This document shows positions 1 to 58,792 of a stretch of DNA of 64,000 nucleotides, one piece after another. The stretch covers positions 62,001 to 126,000 of the forward strand of contig NIVC01000195.1 in NCBI GenBank assembly GCA_002269645.1, in the 5' to 3' direction. Origin of the DNA: Macrostomum lignano. Taxonomy: Eukaryota. The notes below the pieces were generated by a model. That model was not told the origin of the DNA. It ran no database searches and saw only the letters and a program-made list of their open reading frames with translations. Both the position numbers and the translations under genes were made by a program. Positions within the stretch are counted from its first letter, which is position 1; every line of letters starts with the position of its first letter.

Positions 1-1052
1 CTGGGTGTGCAGTGGAGTAGACTGGGTGTGCATTGGAGTAGGCTGGGTGTGCAGTGGAGTAGGCTGGGTGTGCAATGGAGTAGGCTGGGTGTGCAGTGGA
101 GTAGGCTGGGTGTGCAGTGATGTAGGCTGGGTGTGCAGTGGAGTAGACTGGGTGTGCAGTGGAGTAGACTGGGTGTGCAATGGAGTAGGCTGGGTGTGCA
201 TTGGAGTAGGCTGGGTGTGCAATGGAGTAGGCTAGGTGTGCATTGGAGTAGGCTGGGTGTGCAGTGGAGTAGGCTGGGTGTGCAGTGGAGTAGGCTGGGT
301 GTGCATTGGAGTAGGCTGGGTGTGCAGTGGAGTAGGCTGGGTGTGCAGTGGAGTAGGCTGGGTGTGCAGTGGAGTAGACTGGGTGTGCAGTGGAGTAGAC
401 TGGGTGTGCAATGGAGTAGGCTGGGTGTGCAGTGGAGTAGACTGGGTGTGCAATGGAGTAGGCTGGGTGTGCAGTGGAGTAGGCTGGGTGTGCAGTGGAG
501 TAGGCTGGGTGTGCAGTGATGTAGGCTGGGTGTGCAGTGATGTAGGCTGGTTGTGCAGTGGAGTAGGCTGGGTGTGCAATGGAGTAGGCTGGGTGTGCAG
601 TGATGTAGGCTGGGTGTGCAGTGATGTAGACTGGGTGTGCAGTGATGTAGGCTGGGTGTGCAGTGGAGTAGGCTGGGTGTGCAATGGAGTAGGCTGGGTG
701 TGCAGTGATGTAGGCTGGGTGTGCAGTGGAGTAGGCTGGGTGTGCATTGGAGTAGGCTAGGTGTGCAGTGGAGTAGACTGGGTGTGCAATGGAGTAGACT
801 GGGTGTGCAGTGGAGTAGACTGGGTGTGCATTGGAGTAGGCTAGGTGTGCAGTGGAGTAGACTGGGTGTGCAATGGAGTAGACTGGGTGTGCAGTGGAGT
901 AGGCCCAGTGGAGTAGACTGGGTGTGCAAAGGAGTAGGCTAGGTGTGCAGTGGAGTAGACTGGGTGTGCAGTGGAGTAGGCGCAGTGGAGTAGGCGCAGT
1001 GGAGTAGACTGGGTGTGCAGTGGAGTAGGCTGGGTGTGCAGTGGAGTAGACC
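1..1052. repeat. Minisatellite, 21-bp unit (CTGGGTGTGCAGTGGAGTAGG), runs off the window start
   Basis: Directly visible tandem array; explains ORFs 5..235, 133..519, 232..747, 236..760 and 721..942. Confidence 0.97.
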
Positions 1053-1638: not shown

Positions 1639-24987
<23,349 letters not shown>

Positions 24988-28799: not shown

Positions 28800-30044
28800 A
28801 CTGACTGACTTGAGTGAGTGGGTGACTGATTGACTGACTTGAGTGAGTGGGTGACTGATTGACTGACTTGAGTGAGTGGGTGACTGACTGACTGACTTGA
28901 GTGAGTGGGTGACTGATTGACTGACTTGAGTGAGTGGGTGACTGACTGACTGACTTGAGTGAGTGGGTGACTGACTGACTGACTTGAGTAAGTGGGTGAC
29001 TGACTGACTGACTTGAATGAGTGGGTGACTGACTGACTGACTTGAGTGAGTGGGTGACTGATTGACTGACTTGAGTGAGTGGGTGACTGACTGACTTGAG
29101 TGAGTGGGTGACTGACTGACTGACTTGAGTGAGTGGGTGACTGACTGACTGACTTGAGTGAGTGGGTGACTGATTGACTGACTTGAGTGAGTGGGTGACT
29201 GACTGACTGACTTGAGTGAGTGGGTGACTGATTGACTGACTTGAGTGAGTGGGTGACTGACTGACTGACTTGAGTGAGTGGGTGACTGACTGACTGACTT
29301 GAGTGAGTGGGTGACTGACTGACTGACTTGAATGAGTGGGTGACTGACTGACTGACTTGAGTGAGTGGGTGACTGATTGACTGACTTGAGTGAGTGGGTG
29401 ACTGACTGACTGACTTGAGTGAGTGGGTGACTGATTGACTGACTTGAGTGAGTGGGTGACTGACTGACTGACTTGAGTGAGTGGGTGACTGATTGACTGA
29501 CTTGAGTGAGTGGGTGACTGACTGACTGACTTGAGTGAGTGGGTGACTGACTGACTGACTTGAGTGAGTGGGTGACTGACTGACTGACTTGAATGAGTGG
29601 GTGACTGACTGACTGACTTGAGTGAGTGGGTGACTGATTGACTGACTTGAGTGAGTGGGTGACTGACTGACTTGAGTGAGTGGGTGACTGATTGACTGAC
29701 TTGAGTGAGTGGGTGACTGACTGACTTGAGTGAGTGGGTGACTGACTGACTTGAGTGAGTGGGTGACTGACTGACTGACTTGAGTGAGTGGGTGACTGAC
29801 TGACTGACTTAAGTGAGTGGGTGACTGACTGACTGACTTGAGTGAGTGGGTGACTGACTGACTGACTTGAGTGAGTGGGTGACTGACTGACTGACTTGAG
29901 TGAGTGGGTGACTGACTGACTGACTTGAGTGAGTGGGTGACTGACTGACTGACTTGAGTGAGTGGGTGACTGACTGACTGACTTGAGTGAGTGGGTGACT
30001 GACTGACTGACTGAATGACTGACAGACTGACAGACTGACTGGCA

Positions 30045-30075
<31 letters not shown>
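28800..30075. repeat. Minisatellite, 25/29-bp unit (GACTGACTGACTTGAGTGAGTGGGT)
   Basis: Directly visible. Confidence 0.96.
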
Positions 30076-30119
30076 TTAAGCATGTGCTTAAGGTTCTCCA
30101 ATGAGGTTCTCCAATTGAA

Positions 30120-30130
30120 CCTCACTGACT

Positions 30131-30161
<31 letters not shown>

Positions 30162-30166
30162 AGACT

Positions 30167-30200
<34 letters not shown>

Positions 30201-30230
30201 GAGACTGACTGACAGACTGACTGACTGAGA

Positions 30231-30265
<35 letters not shown>

Positions 30266-30382
30266 TGACTGACTGACTGACTGACTGACTGACTGACTGA
30301 CTGACTGACTGACTGACTGACTGACTGACTGACTGACTGACTGACTGACTGACTGACTGACTGACTGACTGACTGACTGACT

Positions 30383-30425
<43 letters not shown>

Positions 30426-30582
30426 TGACTGACTGACTGACTGACTGACTGACTGACTGACTGACTGACTGACTGACTGACTGACTGACTGACTGACTGA
30501 CTGACTGACTGACTGACTGACTGACTGACTGACTGACTGACTGACTGACTGACTGACTGACTGACTGACTGACTGACTGACT

Positions 30583-30625
<43 letters not shown>

Positions 30626-30640
30626 TGACTGACTGACTGA
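30120..30640. repeat. (GACT)n microsatellite
   Basis: Directly visible. Confidence 0.97.
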
Positions 30641-30798
30641 CTTAAAACCATTGGCATTTAAGCAACATGGATTGAAGCAACATAAATTAAACGACTGGGA
30701 TTAAAACAAGGGGGATTTTTGGGATTAAAGCAGCAGAATTAAAGCAACTGAGATTATCAATAGCTTTCATAGTTCAGAGTCCAGTTTTCACCAGAAGT

Positions 30799-31818
30799 TC
30801 AGCGCACCAGACCGAAGAAGCTGCGGATCTCAGCCTCGGTCATTGAGTCGTTCATGACAGCCACTGCCTGCACCGTGCCGTTCAGCATTCGCGAGTCGCC
30901 ACGTTGAAATCCGAGTCTCAGACTGGTGCAGTTGGGAATAACCGATGCAGTATATGAGCCAATCACAGTCCCCTTTTCCGGCGGCACGAAGCCTCCGTTG
31001 GAGAAGAAAGTTCGGCTCGAGACTGACGCCGACGTCAGGCCGACTTCCACGGATGAATTCGCGTCAAAAAAGTTTGTTTCCAGTGCGGTTTGGTAAGAAG
31101 AATAACTCGAAGCGATCCTGACGCCGAACAGGCCTCTTGAAGCTCCGTCCCAGAAGGCGGCTCCAAAGCCACTCCAAGCGGTGCAGTCGTAGCTCTCAAG
31201 AATTGGTGCATCCCCGATCTCCCGCTTGAGCCTGACCAGCCACGTGAGTCCCTGCTGCAGGTTTGCGAACTCCACGTTCTCCAGCCACATCTTGGACGAC
31301 ACTCCGTCGAGCTTGGCTCCCTCGCTGCTCCACTCCACATTCTCCGACATCCACTGCTGCGTCTGGCCGCACACCAAGTTGCTCCTGCTGGCGTCCGCAT
31401 CGTCGCTCATCACCAAGGCGGCCCTCAGCTTCGAGACCACACCCATCACTGCTCAAAGTGATGAAGAACGCAGCTCTGTCATTGGCGAATGCGGCACAGC
31501 GGCGGGGCTGCGAGCTCTCCGCAGCAGCGAGTCCATCGATCAGGTGGCACACTGCGGTGAATTGGAAGAGCGATCAGCAGTCGCGGCTGTACGAGGTCGA
31601 ACTGGGCCACCTGCAGGCCGCTCGAGCCAGCCTCCATGAGGCACTCGCTGATTCCTTTCGGAGTCTGGGCCGCCCGCACTGTCAGATTCTCAGGCAGGCA
31701 CTGCGGGCTGCTCAGGCGGTGCCAGGAGCCCGGCAGGCTCTCGCAGAGGACCAGCTGGGCCAGATAGGCCGCTGCGGGGCAGAACGGAGACTGGAGTAGC
31801 GATGAAGCTGGTTGCCAT
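30799..31818 (-). pseudogene. Disrupted gene for a probably secreted protein: Cys-containing (PAN-like?) N-terminus plus LamG/pentraxin-like domain
   Basis: ORF 30799-31449 has the LamG_3 pattern (LDGVSS...TWLVRLK...LRLG...LNGTVQAVAVMNDSMTEAEIR). Upstream coding-like sequence from ATG 31818 is split over frames, with an in-frame TGA at 31574-31576. Confidence 0.5.
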
Positions 31819-32104
31819 GCTGGCTGCAGTGCGATATTGCGGATGCAAGAGCTGGGAGGGAGGCAGTCGGCAAAAATCTTGCATGTAGTAAAATTTATCC
31901 TGCTCCCGTTGTTGAGCTCAATCGCCCCTACCAGCAGCTGTCCAAGCCATCAGACCCACCTTAGAAACTATCAAATGTCAACTTAAAATGCATAAAACTT
32001 ACCATAGAACTTTAGGAAAGTTTCTAGAATGCCTCAGCTGCTTTATTTAAATGAAGCAGACTCAAATAAGATTACAAAAAGTTTCTCAAACTAAAGGCCT
32101 CAGC

Positions 32105-33599
32105 ATGGACGTGAAGCTACGGGCGCAGTCGCTGATCGAGTTCGGCCTGCCGCGCAACTGGATTGCCCTGGTCGTCGAGCGCTTCGCCCAGGGCGGCATC
32201 ACCAGCCTCACCAGCAACGAGCTGTACATGATCGTCAAGCGGGTTTGCAACATCCTCCGGACCGAGGCCTCCGTGATTGACGTACGAGGCGACTGCCGGG
32301 TGGTCGGCAACCTGCACGGCAGCATTGAGAGCCTGCAGGCGATCTTCCGCACCTACGGCTGGCCAAGCGACGTCTGCTACGTGTTCCTCGGCGACTACCT
32401 TGCCACGATCGACGACAAGATCCAGACGAACGTCTTCGTTCTGCTGCTCATTTTCAAGGTGGTCTACCCGAAGCACATCCTGCTGCTGCGGGGCGCCAGC
32501 GAGTGCGAGCACTGCGCCGCGGACATGGGGCTGCTGGACCTGCGTGAGTTGTGAAGCACCTGCCTGGGCTGTGTCAGGGGGAACAGGACTTAATATCCCC
32601 TATGTATCCGGAATTCAATTTGATGTGGTATGCTGATGCACCTTATGATACTGCTACGAGCGTACTTAGTAAGAAGCATATTGTGTGGGAATGCACCGAA
32701 AAACCATGATTATTCGACTCTAAGGGCGCACTGCTTTTTTATTGCTGTGTTTCAAGCGGGACCAAATTTACATTTGTAGCTCGTAGAATTCATGAGAAAT
32801 TTTTCTACGAACTTGCTACCAATGCCTCCGCAGTGACAACTTCATTCACGGCCTCCCTGTACCGCGAGTTCAAGTCCGTCTTCAAGTACCTGCCGCTTGC
32901 CGCCCGAGCAAACGGCGTTCACCTGATGTGCAACGCGTCTCTCAGCCTGAAGCGAGGCAACCTGCTGGACCTGGAGCAGGTGGTCCGGCCCTGCACCATC
33001 TGCCACCGGGACGGCATCATGCGCCTGCTGGCCAGGCAGCCGTCTCGACTAGGTGACCACACGCTGCAGGCCGACCCGCTTGAGGACTTCGACGAGGGCG
33101 AGACCGAAGGTTTTTGAGTCTTTAGAGACAACTGTTTGAGTTATTATTGAGGGGGACTCAGAAAAAATCTCAAGTTCTTTCTCATTCTACGCACTCACCG
33201 CGTCCAGCAACCAGCAGCAACCAGCAGCCAACAGGATCAGCGTAACAGGGCGCCAACATAGGGAGGGCTTAACTAGGGAACATCTGTTTCAGTAGGAATC
33301 GAAGTTGCTCGCATCCTTTCTCCGCAGATGTCTGCGAGGCCATCAGCTTTATGAAGCGCAGCAACATGAAGATCTGCGTCCGGAACGAGGGCATCGAACA
33401 GTCGCTGGCGGGCGGCTACAACGTCGAGGGCAGGCAGTGCAACGTGATCTCGATTGCGTCCGCCTCGAACATCCGCGGTCAGCCGTGCCAGGGCGTTGTG
33501 CTGGCCGTGCACCGCAACTGCGCCTCCACGCTGCACCCGACTGATCCGAAGGCGGCCAAGCCGGATGTTCGGCTGATCATGTACTGCCCTAATAAGTAG
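32105..33599 (+). CDS. PP1-like (PPP family) Ser/Thr pseudophosphatase, 3 exons
   Basis: Phase-consistent exons 32105(or 32051)-32543, 32834-33109, 33328-33599, collinear with the PP1 fold. Motifs read GNLHG, GDYLATI, LRGASE, MCNAS, VRNEG, SASNI. Confidence 0.85.
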
Positions 33600-34395
33600 C
33601 TGAACCTGCAGTAGCCTCAGGTGCTGATTATTTGCCACTGTTGGATCCCCGATCTGACCTTTCCTGTCCTGTTTGATTACATATAAATCCCACTTTTGCG
33701 TCAGTATGATTCATATGAATGTGGCTGATTCAGACTGCCCCTTTCATACTAGATAGAAACTTATCGTCTTGATTAATATTAAAAAGCATTAACTATATAG
33801 TTGTAAATACAATCTGACTAACGACCATCACAATAATAATAAAGTCCTGCGGATCCCTAGGTTCATATACAGGTAAAATGACGACAAATTAATCGTCTTC
33901 TCTTTTTTACACAAGCAATGATTTGCAGATGTACAAAATCTAAAAGTTATATTGTAAATTCTTTCGAATATTGAAAGCATGATAGTCTTAGAGTTAGCGG
34001 ACACCAACGTCAACCAGCAGACATTTAAAAAATCATTTAATTTGTGGATACATTTGCAAATACAAAGTTGGCCGAAAGTCAGCGTTGATTCCGGTATTCT
34101 TGAAAATGAGACAAGTAAAACCACCATAGCCTAATGCCACCATAAGCAACCATTTCGATCTTATCGGCCTTACGAAAGCCGGAACAGTTACAAGGAACCA
34201 CGTCGAGCACAATGCGCTGAGCTTGGTAATGGCAAGTACACTTGCACGTACAATGACAGGGAACTAAATTGTGCAGACATGTGCTTCGAATTAGGAACTC
34301 AGCGAATGATTATTAAAAGCCCAAGCAACTTGTTGCAGTAGAGGTCTTGTAGCTGCAGAGCAGAGCAATCGAGCAAAATTAAGCCAATTTACTAA

Positions 34396-46968: not shown

Positions 46969-52905
<5,937 letters not shown>

Positions 52906-53514: not shown

Positions 53515-54618
53515 CCCACCCTGACCCACCCTGCATATAACCCATGACCCACCCTGCATATCATCCCTGACCCATCCTGCATATCATCCCTGACCCACCC
53601 TGCATATCATCCCTGACCCACCCTTCATATCATCCCTGACCCACCCTGCATATCATCCCTGACCCACCCTTCATATCATCCCTGACCCACCCTTCATATC
53701 ATCCCTGACCCACCCTTCATATCATCCCTGACCCATCCTGCATATCACCCCTGACCCACCCTGCATATAATCCCTGACCCACCCTGCATATCATCCCTGA
53801 CCCATCCTGCATATCATCTTTGACCCATCCTGCAAATCATTCATGACCTACCCTGCATATAATCCATGACCCACCCTGCATATAACCCATGACCCACCCT
53901 GCATATCATTCATGACCCACCCTGCATATCATCCCTGACCCACCCTGCATATAACCCATGACCCACCCTGCATATCATTCATGACCCACCCTGCATATCA
54001 TCCCTGACCCACCCAGCATATAATCCCTGACCCACCCTGCATATCATTCATGACCCACCCTGCATATCATCCCTGACCCACCCAGCATATAATCCCTGAC
54101 CCACCCTGCATATCATTCATGACCCACCCTGCATATCATCCCTGACCCACCCAGCATATAATCCCTGACCCACCCTGCATATCATCCCTGACCCACCCTG
54201 CATATCATCCCTGACCCACCCTGCATATAATCCCTGACCCACCCTGCATATCATCCCTGACCCACCCTGCATATAACCCATGACCCACCCTGCATATCAT
54301 CCCTGACCCACCCTGCATATAACCCATGACCCACCCTGCATATCATCCCTGACCCACCCTGCATATAACCCATGACCCACCCTGCATATCATCCCTGACC
54401 CATCCTGCATATCATCCCTGACCCACCCAGCATATAATCCCTGACCCACCCTGCATATAATCCCTGACCCACCCTGCATATCATTCATGACCCACCCTGC
54501 ATATCATCCCTGACCCACCCTGCATATAACCCATGACCCACCCTGCATATCATCCCTGACCCACCCTGCATATAACCCATGACCCACCCTGCATATCATC
54601 CCTGACCCACCCTGCATA
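53515..54618. repeat. Minisatellite, 23-bp unit (TGACCCACCCTGCATATCATCCC)
   Basis: Directly visible. Confidence 0.96.
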
Positions 54619-55559
54619 TTGTGCTAACTTTAATGACAGAGGCAGTAGTGTTGAACTCTAGGAGTGAGAAAGAAAGCCCGCTTGAGAGCTTGGCTGATTC
54701 AAATCACTAAGCTGGTCAATAACAATCGCCACTGCTAGTGAGTCAGCAACTCAGTGCACGCAAACTATCACAAAGTTCATGGTGTCACTACATGTATGTC
54801 ACACATCATCGCTGACCCATCACAAGAATGCCCCTGACTCGTCCCAAAACAAATCGCAGAGATCCTGAGTCAATTGGGAATTTCATGCACAGAAGTGCAA
54901 CTTCAAAGGCCTCGGGGGGAATTGCTGTCAGTTTAGCTGCAACCTGCTGCAGTTTAGGCTTTGACAGCTGTGGGATTCCGGGAATTCCTTTTTTGGCCGG
55001 GCCATGGGCCACATCGCGGCTGTGCCTCGCCAGCGCTTTGCGATGGTGCCGAGATTTTATTTGGGAAGTTGCGCCCTGCCTGCGATCGCATCTGCGCTGC
55101 CATCGTGGTTTTCCCCGGGCACCCCCCCCCGCAGCGCATAAACTTTCTCTTACCCAGCCCTTCAGCTTCCCCAGCCCCATCGCTGGTCGGCAACGCGCAG
55201 CCAGCGGGCGAAAACACGGGCTCTGTTTATTTCGCGACATTTTCTGCTGTTACTGTGGGGGCAACTTGCTGCTGCATGGATGGCAACGGCCGCCCATTGG
55301 CCTGCAGGTCCTTATGTATATGGCAGGGCAAGCCTCTCTAAGTCGAATTGGAGTTGCAGTCATGCGTTGCAAGCAGAACAGGCGATTGTAAATTTTTATT
55401 GCACTGATAGAGACAATTCACTTTACCTGATTTTTCTACTTTAGTGCCCGGTCTGCCGCTAAATTGATCCCCCGTGCAAAACTGAAGCTTTGAAAGCTGA
55501 GGCAGATTCCCGCTTGACTCTGCAGTTCCGCTTAAGGTAAGTCTGTATATCGCACTGCA

Positions 55560-56525
55560 GGGGAGAATGAGAGCGAAGGCGGGGAAGAATGAGAGGGGAG
55601 GGTGGGGAAGAATGAGAGGGGAGGGTGGAAAAGAATGAGAGGGGAGGGCGGGGAAGAATGAGAGGGGAGGGTGGGGAAGAATGAGAGGGGAGGGCGGGGA
55701 AGAATGAGAGGGGAGGGTGGGGAAGAATGAGAGGGGAGGGTGGGGAAGAATGAGAGGGGAGGGTGGGGAAGAATGAGAGGGGAGGGTGGGGAAGAATGAG
55801 AGGGGAGGGCGGGGAAGAATGAGAGGGGAGGGCGGGGAAGAATGAGAGGGGAGGGTGGGGAAGAATGAGAGGGGAGGGTGGGGAAGAATGAGAGGGGAGG
55901 GCGGGGAAGAATGAGAGGGGAGGGCGGGGAAGAATGAGGGGAGGGCGGGGAAGAATGAGAGGGGAGGGCGGGGAAGAATGAGGGGAGGGCGGGGAAGAAT
56001 GAGAGGGGAGAGCAGGGAAGAATGAGCGGGAGGGTGGGGAAGAATGAGAGGGAGAGGGCAGGGGATAATGAGAGGAGGAGAGCAGAGGAGAATGAGAGGG
56101 GAGGGCAGGGAAGAATGAGAGGGAGAGGGCAGGGAAGAATGAGAGGGAAAGGGCAGGGAAGAATGAGAGGGAGAGGGCAGGGGAGAATGAGAGGGGAGGG
56201 CAGGGGAGAATGAGAGGGGAGGGCAGGGGAGAATGAGAGGGGAGGGCAGGGGAGAATGAGAGGGGAGGGCAGGGGAGAATGAGAGGAGGAGAGCAGGGGA
56301 GAATGAGAGGAGGAGAGCAGGGGAGAATGAGAGGAGGAGAGCAGGGGAGAATGAGAGGGGAGGGCAGGGGAAATGAGAGGGGAGGGCAGGGGAGAATGAG
56401 AGGAGGAGAGCAGGGGAGAATGAGAGGAGGAGAGCAGGGGAGAATGAGAGGAGGAGAGCAGGGGAGAATGAGAGGAGGAGAGCAGGGGAGAATGAGAGGG
56501 GAGGGCAGGGGAAATGAGAGGGGGC
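55560..56525. repeat. Polypurine minisatellite, ~23-bp unit (GGGGAAGAATGAGAGGGGAGGGC)
   Basis: Directly visible. Confidence 0.95.
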
Positions 56526-57269: not shown

Positions 57270-57785
57270 ACATGTAGCTGTGCTGTTTCTATGTGTTTTT
57301 ATGGTGCTTCTATGGTGTTTCTATGGTGCTTCTATGTGTTTCTATGTGTTTCTATGGTGTTTCTATGGTGTTTCTATGGTGCTTCTATGTGTTTTTATGT
57401 GTTTCTATGGTGTTTCTATGGTGTTTTTACGTGTTTCTATGTGTTTCTATGTGTTTCTATGGTGTTTCTATGTGTTTCTATGGTGCTTCGATGGTGCTTC
57501 GATGGTGCTTCTATGGTGTTTCTATGGTGTTTCTATGTGTTTCTATGGTGCTTCCATGGTGCTTCGATGGTGCTTCTATGGTGTTTCTATGGTGCTTCGA
57601 TGGTGCTTCGATGGTGCATCGATGGTGCTTCTATGGTGTTTCTATGGTGTTTCTATGGTGCTTCTATGGTGTTTGTATGGTGTTTGTATGCGTTTCTATG
57701 TGTTTGTATGTGTTTATATGGTGTTTCTATGTGTTTCTATGGTATTTTATGTGTTTCTATGGTATTTTATGTGTTTCTATGGTGT
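57270..57785. repeat. Minisatellite, ~11-bp unit (TTTCTATGGTG)
   Basis: Directly visible; explains the hydrophobic ORFs at 57222-58067. Confidence 0.95.
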
Positions 57786-58792
57786 TTCCAAGGAGCTGTT
57801 TTTTTTTCTAGAAAAATTTGCAATGCTGTTTCTAGGGCTTTTCTTCATGCTAAATTGCCAGGGCGTTGCTATGGAATCTCTAGGCCCTTGTATGCTGAGT
57901 CTGATGGCTGCAATCCAAATAGCGCCACACGGGAACAGATCCCTACTCGCAAAAAATGGAAGTCTCCTGTTCCGCCCACTTCTCAAATATTTTCTTTGCT
58001 AAAGGCGGGGGGCGCACAGAAAGAGGCTCTGAGGTGCATGATCGATGAGCTCAGGCCTATGCATTGAGTCAACAATTAATGCAGGCGGCCCAGCCTCCCC
58101 CCCCCCGCAACCCGTGATCAGCCACTCGGCCTTCTGCCGATCAGGGCATTATCAGAACCCAATAGCAGCTGGACAAACAGAAAAAAAACATCTTTACGAT
58201 ATCCTAATCCCAGTTTCCTACAAAGCTTCATCATTGCCATCCGGCCGTCTGGAAGATGATAAAGCAATCAGATCGGAAAGGGGAGGATCAGCGGGGCTCA
58301 AGCGATGCTGATTAATCCGCAATCTGTCTGACTGGCGGGCCCGCGCACTCCAGCAGCTCCGGGATTCTGGGAAACGCCATTTCATCCTGCCGCACTACCC
58401 GCGCCCCAGCAACTCGATGGCGTCCTTCAGTTGGAAAGGAAAATCGCCGAGAGGATGAGTGCTTCATCTTGCCCACTTTCTCCATCACAGAGAGAGGCAT
58501 TGGCGGTCTCAATCAAAGTAATGGACTCGGCTTATTGAAGAGCAATATTTGCTCTGAGTGCCTCTACTGGCCCGTGTTTGCTTAAGTTGGATGGCCGGGG
58601 CGGGGGCCGCCAGCTCCCGATAAAAACTGGCCCTCTTGGGGAAATTTCTGGAAGCCAACCAAGCGCTTTCCAGCCCTCCCATCTGCTGCCCTAGCAACTG
58701 GAGCGAGCAGTATAGAAATCGCATATTTTGGAACTCCGAAGGCTGCACTGAATTTTCTCGCTCTCCCCGCCTTGCACAGCTCGCTGGCACCT

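What the first reader, a model, noticed from the sequence alone, without database searches (positions are those of the whole stretch)
32105..33599. PP1-like pseudophosphatase missing nearly every metal ligand
Seen versus the PP1 consensus: GDxHG>GNLHG, GDYVDRG>GDYLATI, RGNHE>RGASE, HGG>NAS, RAHQ>RNEG, SAPNY>SASNI, while the frame, splice sites and hydrophobic core pattern stay intact. Established: these Asp, Asn, His and Arg residues bind the two metals and phosphate in PPP enzymes, and PPP pseudoenzymes are uncommon in animals. Inference: a maintained, catalytically dead scaffold or decoy.
Basis: partly seen in the sequence, partly recalled or inferred. Interest (0 to 1): 0.7.

Follow-up and report, generated by a model that had tools for sequence, protein, structure and literature searches.

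The report
Flatworm PP1-like dead phosphatase gene
This is an intact, transcribed, three-exon gene of the flatworm Macrostomum lignano encoding a phosphatase-fold protein that has lost most of its catalytic residues yet is kept by selection; it is a rare animal case of a "dead" PPP-type phosphatase, and its function is unknown.

Summary
Window 32105-33599 (+) is a three-exon GT-AG gene of 328 codons. It is identical to GenBank BOX15_Mlig024376g3 of Macrostomum lignano, an annotation built from RNA-seq transcripts. The protein has a PPP fold and scores best against PP1 (E about 1e-20; predicted-structure TM 0.65-0.75).

Four of the six metal ligands are replaced: D64N, N124A, H173N, H248E. Also lost are the general acid His125 (to Ser), both phosphate-binding arginines (to Asp and Glu) and Tyr272. 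The equivalents of His66 and Asp92 remain.

It is not a decaying pseudogene:
- Three copies about 1-2% apart all keep the frame and splice sites, with dN/dS of 0.08-0.16.
- A second M. lignano family, 43% identical with the same two intron positions, is also catalytically stripped.
- dS between the two families is saturated, and neutral simulation left no open frame at that divergence (0 of 5000).

No relative was found outside M. lignano. The residues of the RVxF groove are not kept, so a decoy for PP1 regulators is unlikely. Tissue, partners and lack of activity remain untested.

Verdict: a lineage-specific PPP-type pseudophosphatase under purifying selection, of moderate interest.

The parts
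32044..32051 (+). TATA-like box TATTTAAA, about 27-34 nt upstream of the annotated transcript start
   Evidence: Motif scan and the position of the annotated 5' end. A promoter role is inferred.
32078..32104 (+). Short 5' leader of the annotated transcript. The GenBank CDS is '5' partial' and starts here. The in-frame ATG at 32051 lies upstream of it.
   Evidence: P0001 begins KVSQTKGLSM. The gene span in L005, 10001-11522, equals window 32078-33599. ORF list.
32105..32543 (+). Exon 1 (aa 1-146 plus 1 nt). It carries GNLHG (N69 codon 32309-32311, H71 32315-32317), GDYLATI (D97 32393-32395) and RGASE (A131-S132 32495-32500), followed by the family motif SECEHCAADMGL.
32544..32833 (+). Intron 1 (GTGAGT...CCGCAG, phase 1, 44% GC against 63% in the CDS). 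Its position is shared with the paralogue family.
32834..33109 (+). Exon 2 (aa 147-238 plus 1 nt). It carries FKYLPLAA and NAS in place of HGG (N180 codon 32932-32934). The acidic DFDEGETE segment stands where the PP1 Arg221 loop would be.
33110..33327 (+). Intron 2 (GTTTTT...CCGCAG, phase 1). Its position is shared with the paralogue family.
33328..33599 (+). Exon 3 (aa 239-328 plus the TAG stop). It carries RNEG in place of RAHQ (E259 codon 33387-33389) and SASNI in place of SAPNY (I287 codon 33471-33473).
33778..33843 (+). Candidate polyadenylation signals: ATTAAA at 33778 and AATAAA at 33838.
   Evidence: Motif scan. Not verified with reads.

Best explanation
The locus is one of three near-identical copies (Mlig024376.g1-g3) of a Macrostomum lignano gene. 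It encodes a PPP-fold, PP1-nearest protein whose two-metal phosphoesterase site was dismantled long ago, before the split from a second M. lignano family (Mlig016765/Mlig023519).

Shown:
- The gene is intact and spliced, and its annotation comes from RNA-seq transcripts.
- It is under purifying selection.
- The N-terminal core of the fold (about aa 63-146) is the most conserved and most confidently predicted part.
- The former catalytic positions drift freely: N, S or K at the Asp64 site, A or L at Asn124, N or C at His173, E or G at His248.

Inferred:
- The protein no longer hydrolyses phosphoesters by the PPP mechanism.
- It works as a non-catalytic binding or scaffolding module through the conserved core surface, which includes the family-specific SECEHCAA(D/E)MGL segment.
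- It probably does not work through the PP1 RVxF groove or by trapping phosphate.
For: - Gene model and identity to PAA88332.1.
- PPP homology and fold.
- Residue map.
- Three copies with intact frames and GT-AG sites. Synonymous to non-synonymous differences are 8:4, 8:2 and 14:4, giving omega 0.16, 0.08 and 0.09, with p from 2e-3 to 3e-6. The only coding indel is in frame (6 nt), while introns carry 7-16 gapped columns.
- Non-synonymous changes between copies avoid aa 70-174. One falls on the former Asp64 site.
- The paralogue family is 43% identical, equally stripped and shares both intron positions.
- dS between families is about 1.5. Neutral simulation left 0 of 5000 ORFs open at 0.5 or more substitutions per site.
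- In the core, dN is 0.31 against dS of at least 1.1. In the C-terminal third, dN is 0.89.
- The GenBank annotation was derived from StringTie/TACO RNA-seq assemblies: PMC5730564.
Against: - No assay of activity. Motif-based calls of 'pseudophosphatase' have been wrong before; yeast Ppn2 is active despite a degenerate motif (PMC13216928).
- His71 and Asp97 are retained, and N69, N180 and E259 are possible metal ligands.
- No tissue or expression level was found for this gene.
- RNA-seq reads cannot be assigned among the three near-identical copies, so transcription of this particular copy is not proven.
- dN/dS among copies rests on only about 20 substitutions.
- No orthologue from another species was available.
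- The binding-module mechanism is inference, with no partner known.
Confidence: 0.72

Rival explanations
1. The protein is a still-active hydrolase with a remodelled site. It would use the retained His71 and Asp97 plus Asn69, Asn180 and Glu259, or the CxHC cluster, to bind one or two metals and act on a different substrate.
For: Five of the six former ligand positions in this copy still carry side chains that can coordinate metals. Cys134, His136 and Cys137 are invariant in both families. Yeast Ppn2 is a precedent for an active enzyme with a degenerate PPP motif.
Against: The same positions are S69 in copy g2 and K, N, L, C, G in the paralogue, so they are not conserved as a site. The general acid His125 is Ser in all copies. 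Arg96 and Arg221 are Asp and Glu in this copy, a charge reversal that would repel phosphate.
Confidence: 0.1
2. The protein is a decoy for PP1 regulators. It would bind RVxF, SILK or other PP1-docking motifs and titrate regulatory subunits or inhibitors away from active PP1.
For: PP1 is the nearest family by sequence and by predicted structure.
Against: Of 11 residues of the RVxF groove, only about 3 are conservatively retained, and they differ between the two families. SILK-pocket acidic residues are also not kept. The C-terminal half that builds the groove is the least conserved part (22-35% between families) and has pLDDT below 50 over aa 213-246 and 269-283. The alignment there is uncertain, which weakens this argument somewhat.
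Confidence: 0.1
3. The locus is a non-functional relic: an unprocessed pseudogene or neutrally drifting duplicate that merely has not yet acquired a stop.
For: Overall exon divergence among the three copies (0.4-2.5%) is similar to intron divergence (1-2.5%). At that divergence an open frame alone is uninformative; 47% of simulated ORFs stayed open at 0.03 substitutions per site. No orthologue was found outside the species.
Against: Substitutions in exons are overwhelmingly synonymous, with omega 0.08-0.16. The only coding indel is in frame. A paralogue family at saturated dS keeps the frame, the splice sites and long identical motifs. The gene is in a transcript-derived annotation. GC3 is 0.88.
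Confidence: 0.06

Closest known systems
PP1 catalytic subunit (PPP1C; PPP family, Pfam PF00149 Metallophos)
   Same: Same fold and domain length. It is the best sequence match (E about 1e-20 over aa 28-218) and the best structural match (TM 0.65-0.75). Hydrophobic core motifs are shared: LRG, YLFLGDY-like YVFLGDY, and LPLAA.
   Different: Only 2 of the 6 metal ligands are retained. The general acid, both phosphate-clamp arginines and Tyr272 are lost. The RVxF groove is not conserved and no STPPase_N domain was detected. Identity to PP1 is only about 20-25%, whereas true PP1 orthologues are extremely conserved (own knowledge). PP1 outscores calcineurin by only about 8-12 bits.
PfPPP8 and apicomplexan relatives (PPP-type pseudophosphatase of the Plasmodium basal complex; PMC10317984)
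   Same: A PPP-fold protein with mutated metal-binding aspartates that is nevertheless functional. Its authors describe it as the first experimentally characterised PPP-type pseudophosphatase.
   Different: It has an independent origin; no apicomplexan or other outside protein is specifically related. PfPPP8 is a large multidomain protein mutated mainly in GDxxDRG. This protein is a bare 328-aa domain with almost all motifs degraded.
Kinetoplastid kPPP and PP2B-like predicted pseudophosphatases (TriTryp phosphatome, PMC2175518)
   Same: Lineage-specific, fast-evolving PPP paralogues with substituted catalytic residues, predicted from sequence only.
   Different: They are from protists and are unrelated lineages. 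None has been described in an animal. A 2026 survey states that no pseudophosphatase is reported in the human PPP-like fold (PMC13216928).
Mlig016765.g1 / Mlig023519.g1-g2 (M. lignano hypothetical proteins PAA81591.1, PAA47705.1, PAA80181.1)
   Same: The only true relatives found: 43% identity, the same three-exon structure with both intron positions shared, the same loss of catalysis, and shared motifs CRVVGxLHG, YGWPS, YVFLGxYL, SECEHCAA(D/E)MGL, FKYLPLAA and HRN..T.HP.
   Different: The residues at the dead positions differ (K, N, L, C, G). The introns are longer and there is a 25-aa C-terminal extension. They lie at a different genomic locus.
RNA815_7008, the testis-specific divergent PP1-like gene of M. 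lignano needed for spermiogenesis (Arbore et al. 2015, PMC4490696)
   Same: A divergent PP1-like gene in the same species with a reproductive function. It shows that PPP duplicates are recruited to the testis here.
   Different: It is a different gene; its transcript begins MQKNKKKDDKATEGF.... It gives no evidence on the expression of the present gene.

Membership tests
PPP-fold phosphatase superfamily (Metallophos, PF00149) | Significant sequence similarity to the PPP catalytic domain | tested here: met
   Pfam 28.3 bits against a 21.5 cut-off. PP1 E about 1e-20. 1071 library proteins at E<=1e-10.
PPP-fold phosphatase superfamily (Metallophos, PF00149) | Alpha/beta sandwich fold of PPP enzymes | tested here: met
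   AlphaFold2 pTM 0.77, core pLDDT about 90. Foldseek top hits are all PP1, PP2A or calcineurin, with E about 1e-16 to 1e-17 and TM 0.65-0.75. The C-terminal half is of low confidence.
Active PPP enzyme | Signature motifs GDxHG, GDxVDRG and GNHE | tested here: not met
   The motifs read GNLHG, GDYLATI(D) and GASE.
Active PPP enzyme | Six metal ligands (PP1 D64, H66, D92, N124, H173, H248) | tested here: not met
   They read N, H, D, A, N, E in this copy, S at the first position in g2, and K, H, N, L, C, G in the paralogue.
Active PPP enzyme | General acid His125 with its Asp95 partner, and phosphate-binding Arg96 and Arg221 | tested here: not met
   They read S132, I102, D103 and E234.
Active PPP enzyme | Phosphatase activity in vitro | not testable with these tools
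   Needs recombinant protein and a pNPP or phosphopeptide assay.
PP1 subfamily | Scores better with PP1 than with other PPP subfamilies | tested here: inconclusive
   PP1 scores 72-76 bits and calcineurin 64 bits. With the family profile, a nematode PP1 scores 100 bits and calcineurin 91 bits. No phylogeny was made.
PP1 subfamily | Conserved RVxF-binding groove (I169, D242, L243, F257, R261, V264, L289, M290, C291, F293) | tested here: not met
   These positions read H, K, I, gap, C, I, C, A, S, L. The alignment of this half is uncertain.
PP1 subfamily | PP1 N-terminal domain (PF16891) and the SAPNYC beta12-beta13 loop | tested here: not met
   No PF16891 hit. The loop reads SASNIR.
Pseudophosphatase (functional class) | Phosphatase fold with catalytic residues lost | tested here: met
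Pseudophosphatase (functional class) | Evolutionary maintenance (purifying selection, intact frame) | tested here: met
   Omega 0.08-0.16 among copies. The paralogue family is intact at saturated dS. Neutral ORF survival was 0 of 5000.
Pseudophosphatase (functional class) | Expressed as mRNA or protein | tested here: inconclusive
   The GenBank model BOX15_Mlig024376g3 comes from an annotation built only from RNA-seq and de novo transcripts. No reads, level or tissue could be inspected, and the copy of origin is ambiguous.
PfPPP8 family | Specific sequence relationship (orthology) | tested here: not met
   Only M. lignano proteins pass E<=1e-30 in the exhaustive scan. All other hits are generic PPPs at 41% identity or less over partial stretches.
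Unprocessed pseudogene | Disabling mutations or omega near 1 | tested here: not met
   No stop, frameshift or splice-site loss in any of 3+2 loci examined. Omega is well below 1.

The most novel reading that the evidence does not exclude
The two M. lignano families would be the first metazoan PPP-type pseudophosphatases with a genuine new function. The conserved core, including the invariant SECEHCAA(D/E)MGL segment with its Cys-x-His-Cys cluster, would have been re-purposed as a new binding, metal or redox site. That function might lie in the germline, as with other divergent PP1 duplicates of this species.
Probability: 0.3. Interest if true: 0.6.

Novelty: new member of a known kind. Interest (0 to 1): 0.42.

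Why it matters
Pseudophosphatases are well known in the Cys-based folds but barely documented for the PPP fold. One apicomplexan family (PfPPP8) has been characterised and kinetoplastid candidates predicted. In the papers searched, none is reported for humans and none turned up for any animal.

This would be an animal example with clear purifying selection and an old, duplicated lineage. M. lignano has RNAi, in situ hybridisation and transgenesis, so the question of what a PPP fold can do without its metals becomes testable.

There is also a practical point. UniProt entries for these proteins carry the enzyme name 'protein-serine/threonine phosphatase', which is probably wrong.

Tried and rejected
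- **Gene identifiers in paper supplements.** I searched for Mlig024376, Mlig016765 and Mlig023519 to find tissue or germline classification. Nothing was found, or no files were held, for PMC5816591, PMC7336406, PMC5730564, PMC10786194, PMC12896417 and PMC8629364. The full-text search was also empty.
- **The published testis PP1-like RNAi gene RNA815_7008.** I checked whether it is this gene. It is not; the sequence is different.
- **P0002 (68% identical, 'CRAL-TRIO').** I considered it as a divergent paralogue for dN/dS and rejected it. It is the same gene from the older ML2 assembly, read through frameshifts and fused to upstream sequence.
- **Other copies in the window.** None were found.
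- **An antisense gene as the cause of conservation.** Only the usual GC-rich antisense ORFs are present.
- **Orthologues in other species.** None turned up by word-indexed search, profile search or the exhaustive HMMER scan. Other Macrostomum genomes are not in the collections offered.
- **Other motif-less PPP-like proteins among the top 150 hits** (P0015, P0070, P0083, P0093, P0135 and others). All come from unnamed metagenome or Logan contigs and share no derived motif with this family. They look like independent losses.

Full report
**1. What is there**

The region is GC-rich coding sequence (63% GC, GC3 0.88) interrupted by two AT-richer introns (44% and 48% GC). Translation and splice-site inspection give one clean model on the + strand:
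- exon 1, 32105-32543
- intron 1, GTGAGT...CCGCAG
- exon 2, 32834-33109
- intron 2, GTTTTT...CCGCAG
- exon 3, 33328-33599, ending in TAG

The CDS is 987 nt and encodes 328 aa. The start codon has A at -3 and G at +4.

The product is 100% identical to GenBank PAA88332.1, 'hypothetical protein BOX15_Mlig024376g3, partial' of the free-living flatworm Macrostomum lignano. The window therefore comes from contig NIVC01000195.1 of assembly Mlig_3_7. That CDS begins 27 nt upstream of the ATG, at window 32078, because the reading frame is open to the 5' end of the transcript. A TATTTAAA box lies about 27-34 nt further upstream, at 32044-32051. An in-frame ATG at 32051 lies outside the annotated transcript.

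**2. The observation**

I aligned the protein with human PP1-alpha and five active PPPs.

| PP1 residue | Role | This copy (g3) | Copy g2 | Paralogue |
|---|---|---|---|---|
| D64 | metal ligand | N69 | S | K |
| H66 | metal ligand | H71 (kept) | kept | kept |
| D92 | metal ligand | D97 (kept) | kept | N |
| N124 | metal ligand | A131 | A | L |
| H173 | metal ligand | N180 | N | C |
| H248 | metal ligand | E259 | E | G |
| H125 | general acid | S132 | S | S |
| D95 | partner of H125 | I102 | I | V |
| R96 | phosphate binding | D103 | D | Q |
| R221 | phosphate binding | E234 | E | R |
| D208 | not assigned (invariant Asp in the five active PPPs) | Q215 | Q | L |
| Y272 | beta12-beta13 loop | I287 | I | V |

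So four of six metal ligands are replaced in this copy, not 'nearly every' one. With the acid and both arginines gone, the PPP catalytic machinery is clearly dismantled.

Homology itself is not in doubt:
- Pfam Metallophos scores above its cut-off.
- PP1 structures match at E about 1e-20.
- An AlphaFold2 model (pTM 0.77, pLDDT about 90 over aa 50-190) matches PP1, PP2A and calcineurin structures at TM 0.65-0.75.

**3. Is it a live gene?**

Three lines of evidence say yes.

(a) The GenBank annotation of Mlig_3_7 was built only from RNA evidence. It used StringTie/TACO assemblies of RNA-seq plus a de novo transcriptome, with gene ends cut by trans-splicing and poly(A) data and ORFs called by TransDecoder (PMC5730564). 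The deposited CDS uses exactly the two introns I derived independently.

(b) The assembly holds three copies, g1, g2 and g3. This fits the reported duplication of this genome. At least g1 and g2 share flanking genes: a SHIP-like SH2 inositol phosphatase upstream and an MCM gene downstream. The copies differ by about 1-2% in exons, introns and flanks alike. Within the CDS the differences are mostly silent:
- g3-g2: 8 synonymous, 4 non-synonymous, omega 0.16
- g3-g1: 8 synonymous, 2 non-synonymous, omega 0.08
- g2-g1: 14 synonymous, 4 non-synonymous, omega 0.09

Binomial p against neutrality ranges from 2e-3 to 3e-6. The only coding indel is an in-frame 6-nt insertion in a loop of low model confidence. 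The introns carry 7-16 gapped columns each. All GT-AG sites are kept. The amino-acid changes avoid aa 70-174, and one sits on the former Asp64 position (N or S).

(c) An exhaustive HMMER scan of 1.84 billion representative proteins found just one further relative, P0011 (E 3e-60, 43% identity). It is another M. lignano gene, Mlig016765.g1, with copies Mlig023519.g1 and g2. It has the same three-exon structure with both introns at the homologous codons. It is also stripped of catalytic residues, mostly to different amino acids.

Between the two families dS is saturated (about 1.5) and dN is 0.62. In the core, aa 63-146, dN is 0.31. A substitution-only neutral simulation left no open frame in 5000 trials at 0.5 or more substitutions per site. 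The shared Ser at the His125 position and the shared, non-PP1 motif SECEHCAA(D/E)MGL indicate that inactivation predates the split. Both lineages have been kept since. The 'unprocessed pseudogene' alternative is thus rejected.

**4. What it probably does**

Conservation between the two families is concentrated in the N-terminal core:
- aa 63-100: 66% identical
- aa 101-146: 57% identical
- from aa 201 on: 22-35% identical

The C-terminal part is also where the model is poor, with pLDDT below 50 at aa 213-246 and 269-283.

The residues that form the RVxF docking groove of PP1 are not kept and differ between the families. The SILK-pocket acids and the acidic and hydrophobic groove residues are also largely changed. 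A decoy for PP1 regulators is therefore unlikely, with the caveat that the C-terminal alignment is soft. A 'grab-and-hold' phosphate trap is unlikely too, because Arg96 and Arg221 are Asp and Glu here.

My best reading is a non-catalytic binding or scaffold module that uses the conserved core surface. This is inference, since no partner or tissue is known.

A minority possibility is a remodelled metal or redox site. Candidates are His71, Asp97 and the invariant Cys134-x-His136-Cys137. Yeast Ppn2 is a reminder that degenerate PPP motifs do not always mean inactivity.

**5. Comparison with what is known**

The protein belongs to the PPP fold but fails every test for an active PPP. It is nearest to PP1, but only by about 8-12 bits over calcineurin, and it lacks PP1-specific features. 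I would call it a divergent PPP-type, PP1-nearest pseudophosphatase.

Known PPP-type pseudophosphatases are:
- PfPPP8 and its apicomplexan relatives, called by their authors the first characterised case (PMC10317984)
- predicted kinetoplastid kPPPs (PMC2175518)
- fungal Ppn2-type proteins (PMC13216928)

The last paper states that none is reported in the human PPP-like fold. My literature searches found no animal case. From memory, phosphatome surveys note degenerate PP1-like genes in nematodes, and I could not check this.

Among the top 150 library hits, about 20 other proteins lack several motifs. The ten whose sources I looked up all come from unnamed environmental eukaryote contigs, and those I aligned share no derived motif with this family. 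Loss of catalysis in PPP duplicates therefore recurs, but this lineage is independent. On present data it is restricted to M. lignano.

**6. Verdict**

- The interpretation 'maintained and catalytically dead' is supported by new evidence.
- 'Scaffold or decoy' and 'gonad' remain open, and the RVxF-decoy version is disfavoured.
- It is a new, lineage-specific member of a known but sparsely populated class, in an experimentally tractable animal.
- Interest is moderate.

Noticed in passing
window 1-1049, 3328-3704, 5975-6406, 9823-10300, 11504-12050, 12574-13624, 17037-17654, 18025-18694, 20319-21268, 22165-22788, 28800-30643, 50789-51459, 53519-54619, 55557-56523, 57284-57788: Minisatellites are extraordinarily dense: about 25 unrelated tandem arrays (units of 4-41 nt, up to about 450 copies, 80-99% matches) in 64 kb. 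They explain the strong local GC- and AT-skew blocks in the composition profile. The 1.8-kb ACTG/116-nt array at 28800-30643 lies about 1.4 kb upstream of the gene's annotated transcript start.
   Followed up: partly
window 32495-32524 (aa 131-140); L003 and L004 homologous positions: The segment replacing GNHECASIN reads (A/L)SECEHCAA(D/E)MGL and is invariant across both dead families. Its Cys-x-His-Cys cluster is absent from active PPPs. It could be a new metal or redox site. This is unexplained.
   Followed up: partly
P0002, P0008, P0009, P0010 (UniProt entries from the older ML2 assembly): UniProt names these copies 'protein-serine/threonine phosphatase', which is probably wrong for a protein without the catalytic residues. 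P0002 is a 558-aa 'CRAL-TRIO domain-containing' model that fuses upstream + strand sequence (window about 31600-31780) with a frameshift-riddled reading of this gene. P0009 reads into intron 2.
   Followed up: partly
window 22078-24987 (-); L003 13362-15181 (+): Both dead-PPP loci sit next to SH2-domain phosphatase genes. A SHIP-like SH2 plus inositol-5-phosphatase plus C2 gene lies upstream of this gene in all three copies. An SH2-SH2-PTP (SHP-like) gene lies downstream of the paralogue. This is probably coincidence.
   Followed up: no
window 30799-31446 (-): A 215-aa gene without any Pfam hit is annotated on the minus strand between the ACTG array and this gene. The g1 locus instead has a 317-aa + strand gene without Pfam hits at L002 6254-7207.
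   Followed up: no
window 32051-32053: An in-frame ATG lies 54 nt upstream of the start codon, directly after the TATA-like box. It would add 18 residues (MKQTQIRLQKVSQTKGLS) if transcripts start further upstream than annotated.
   Followed up: partly
P0015, P0070, P0083, P0093, P0135 (metagenome and Logan contigs): Several PPP-like proteins from unnamed environmental eukaryotes lack all five catalytic motifs. P0135 even shares VVGNLHGS and RGAQEC-like strings with this gene, but nothing else. These look like independent, undescribed dead-PPP lineages.
   Followed up: partly
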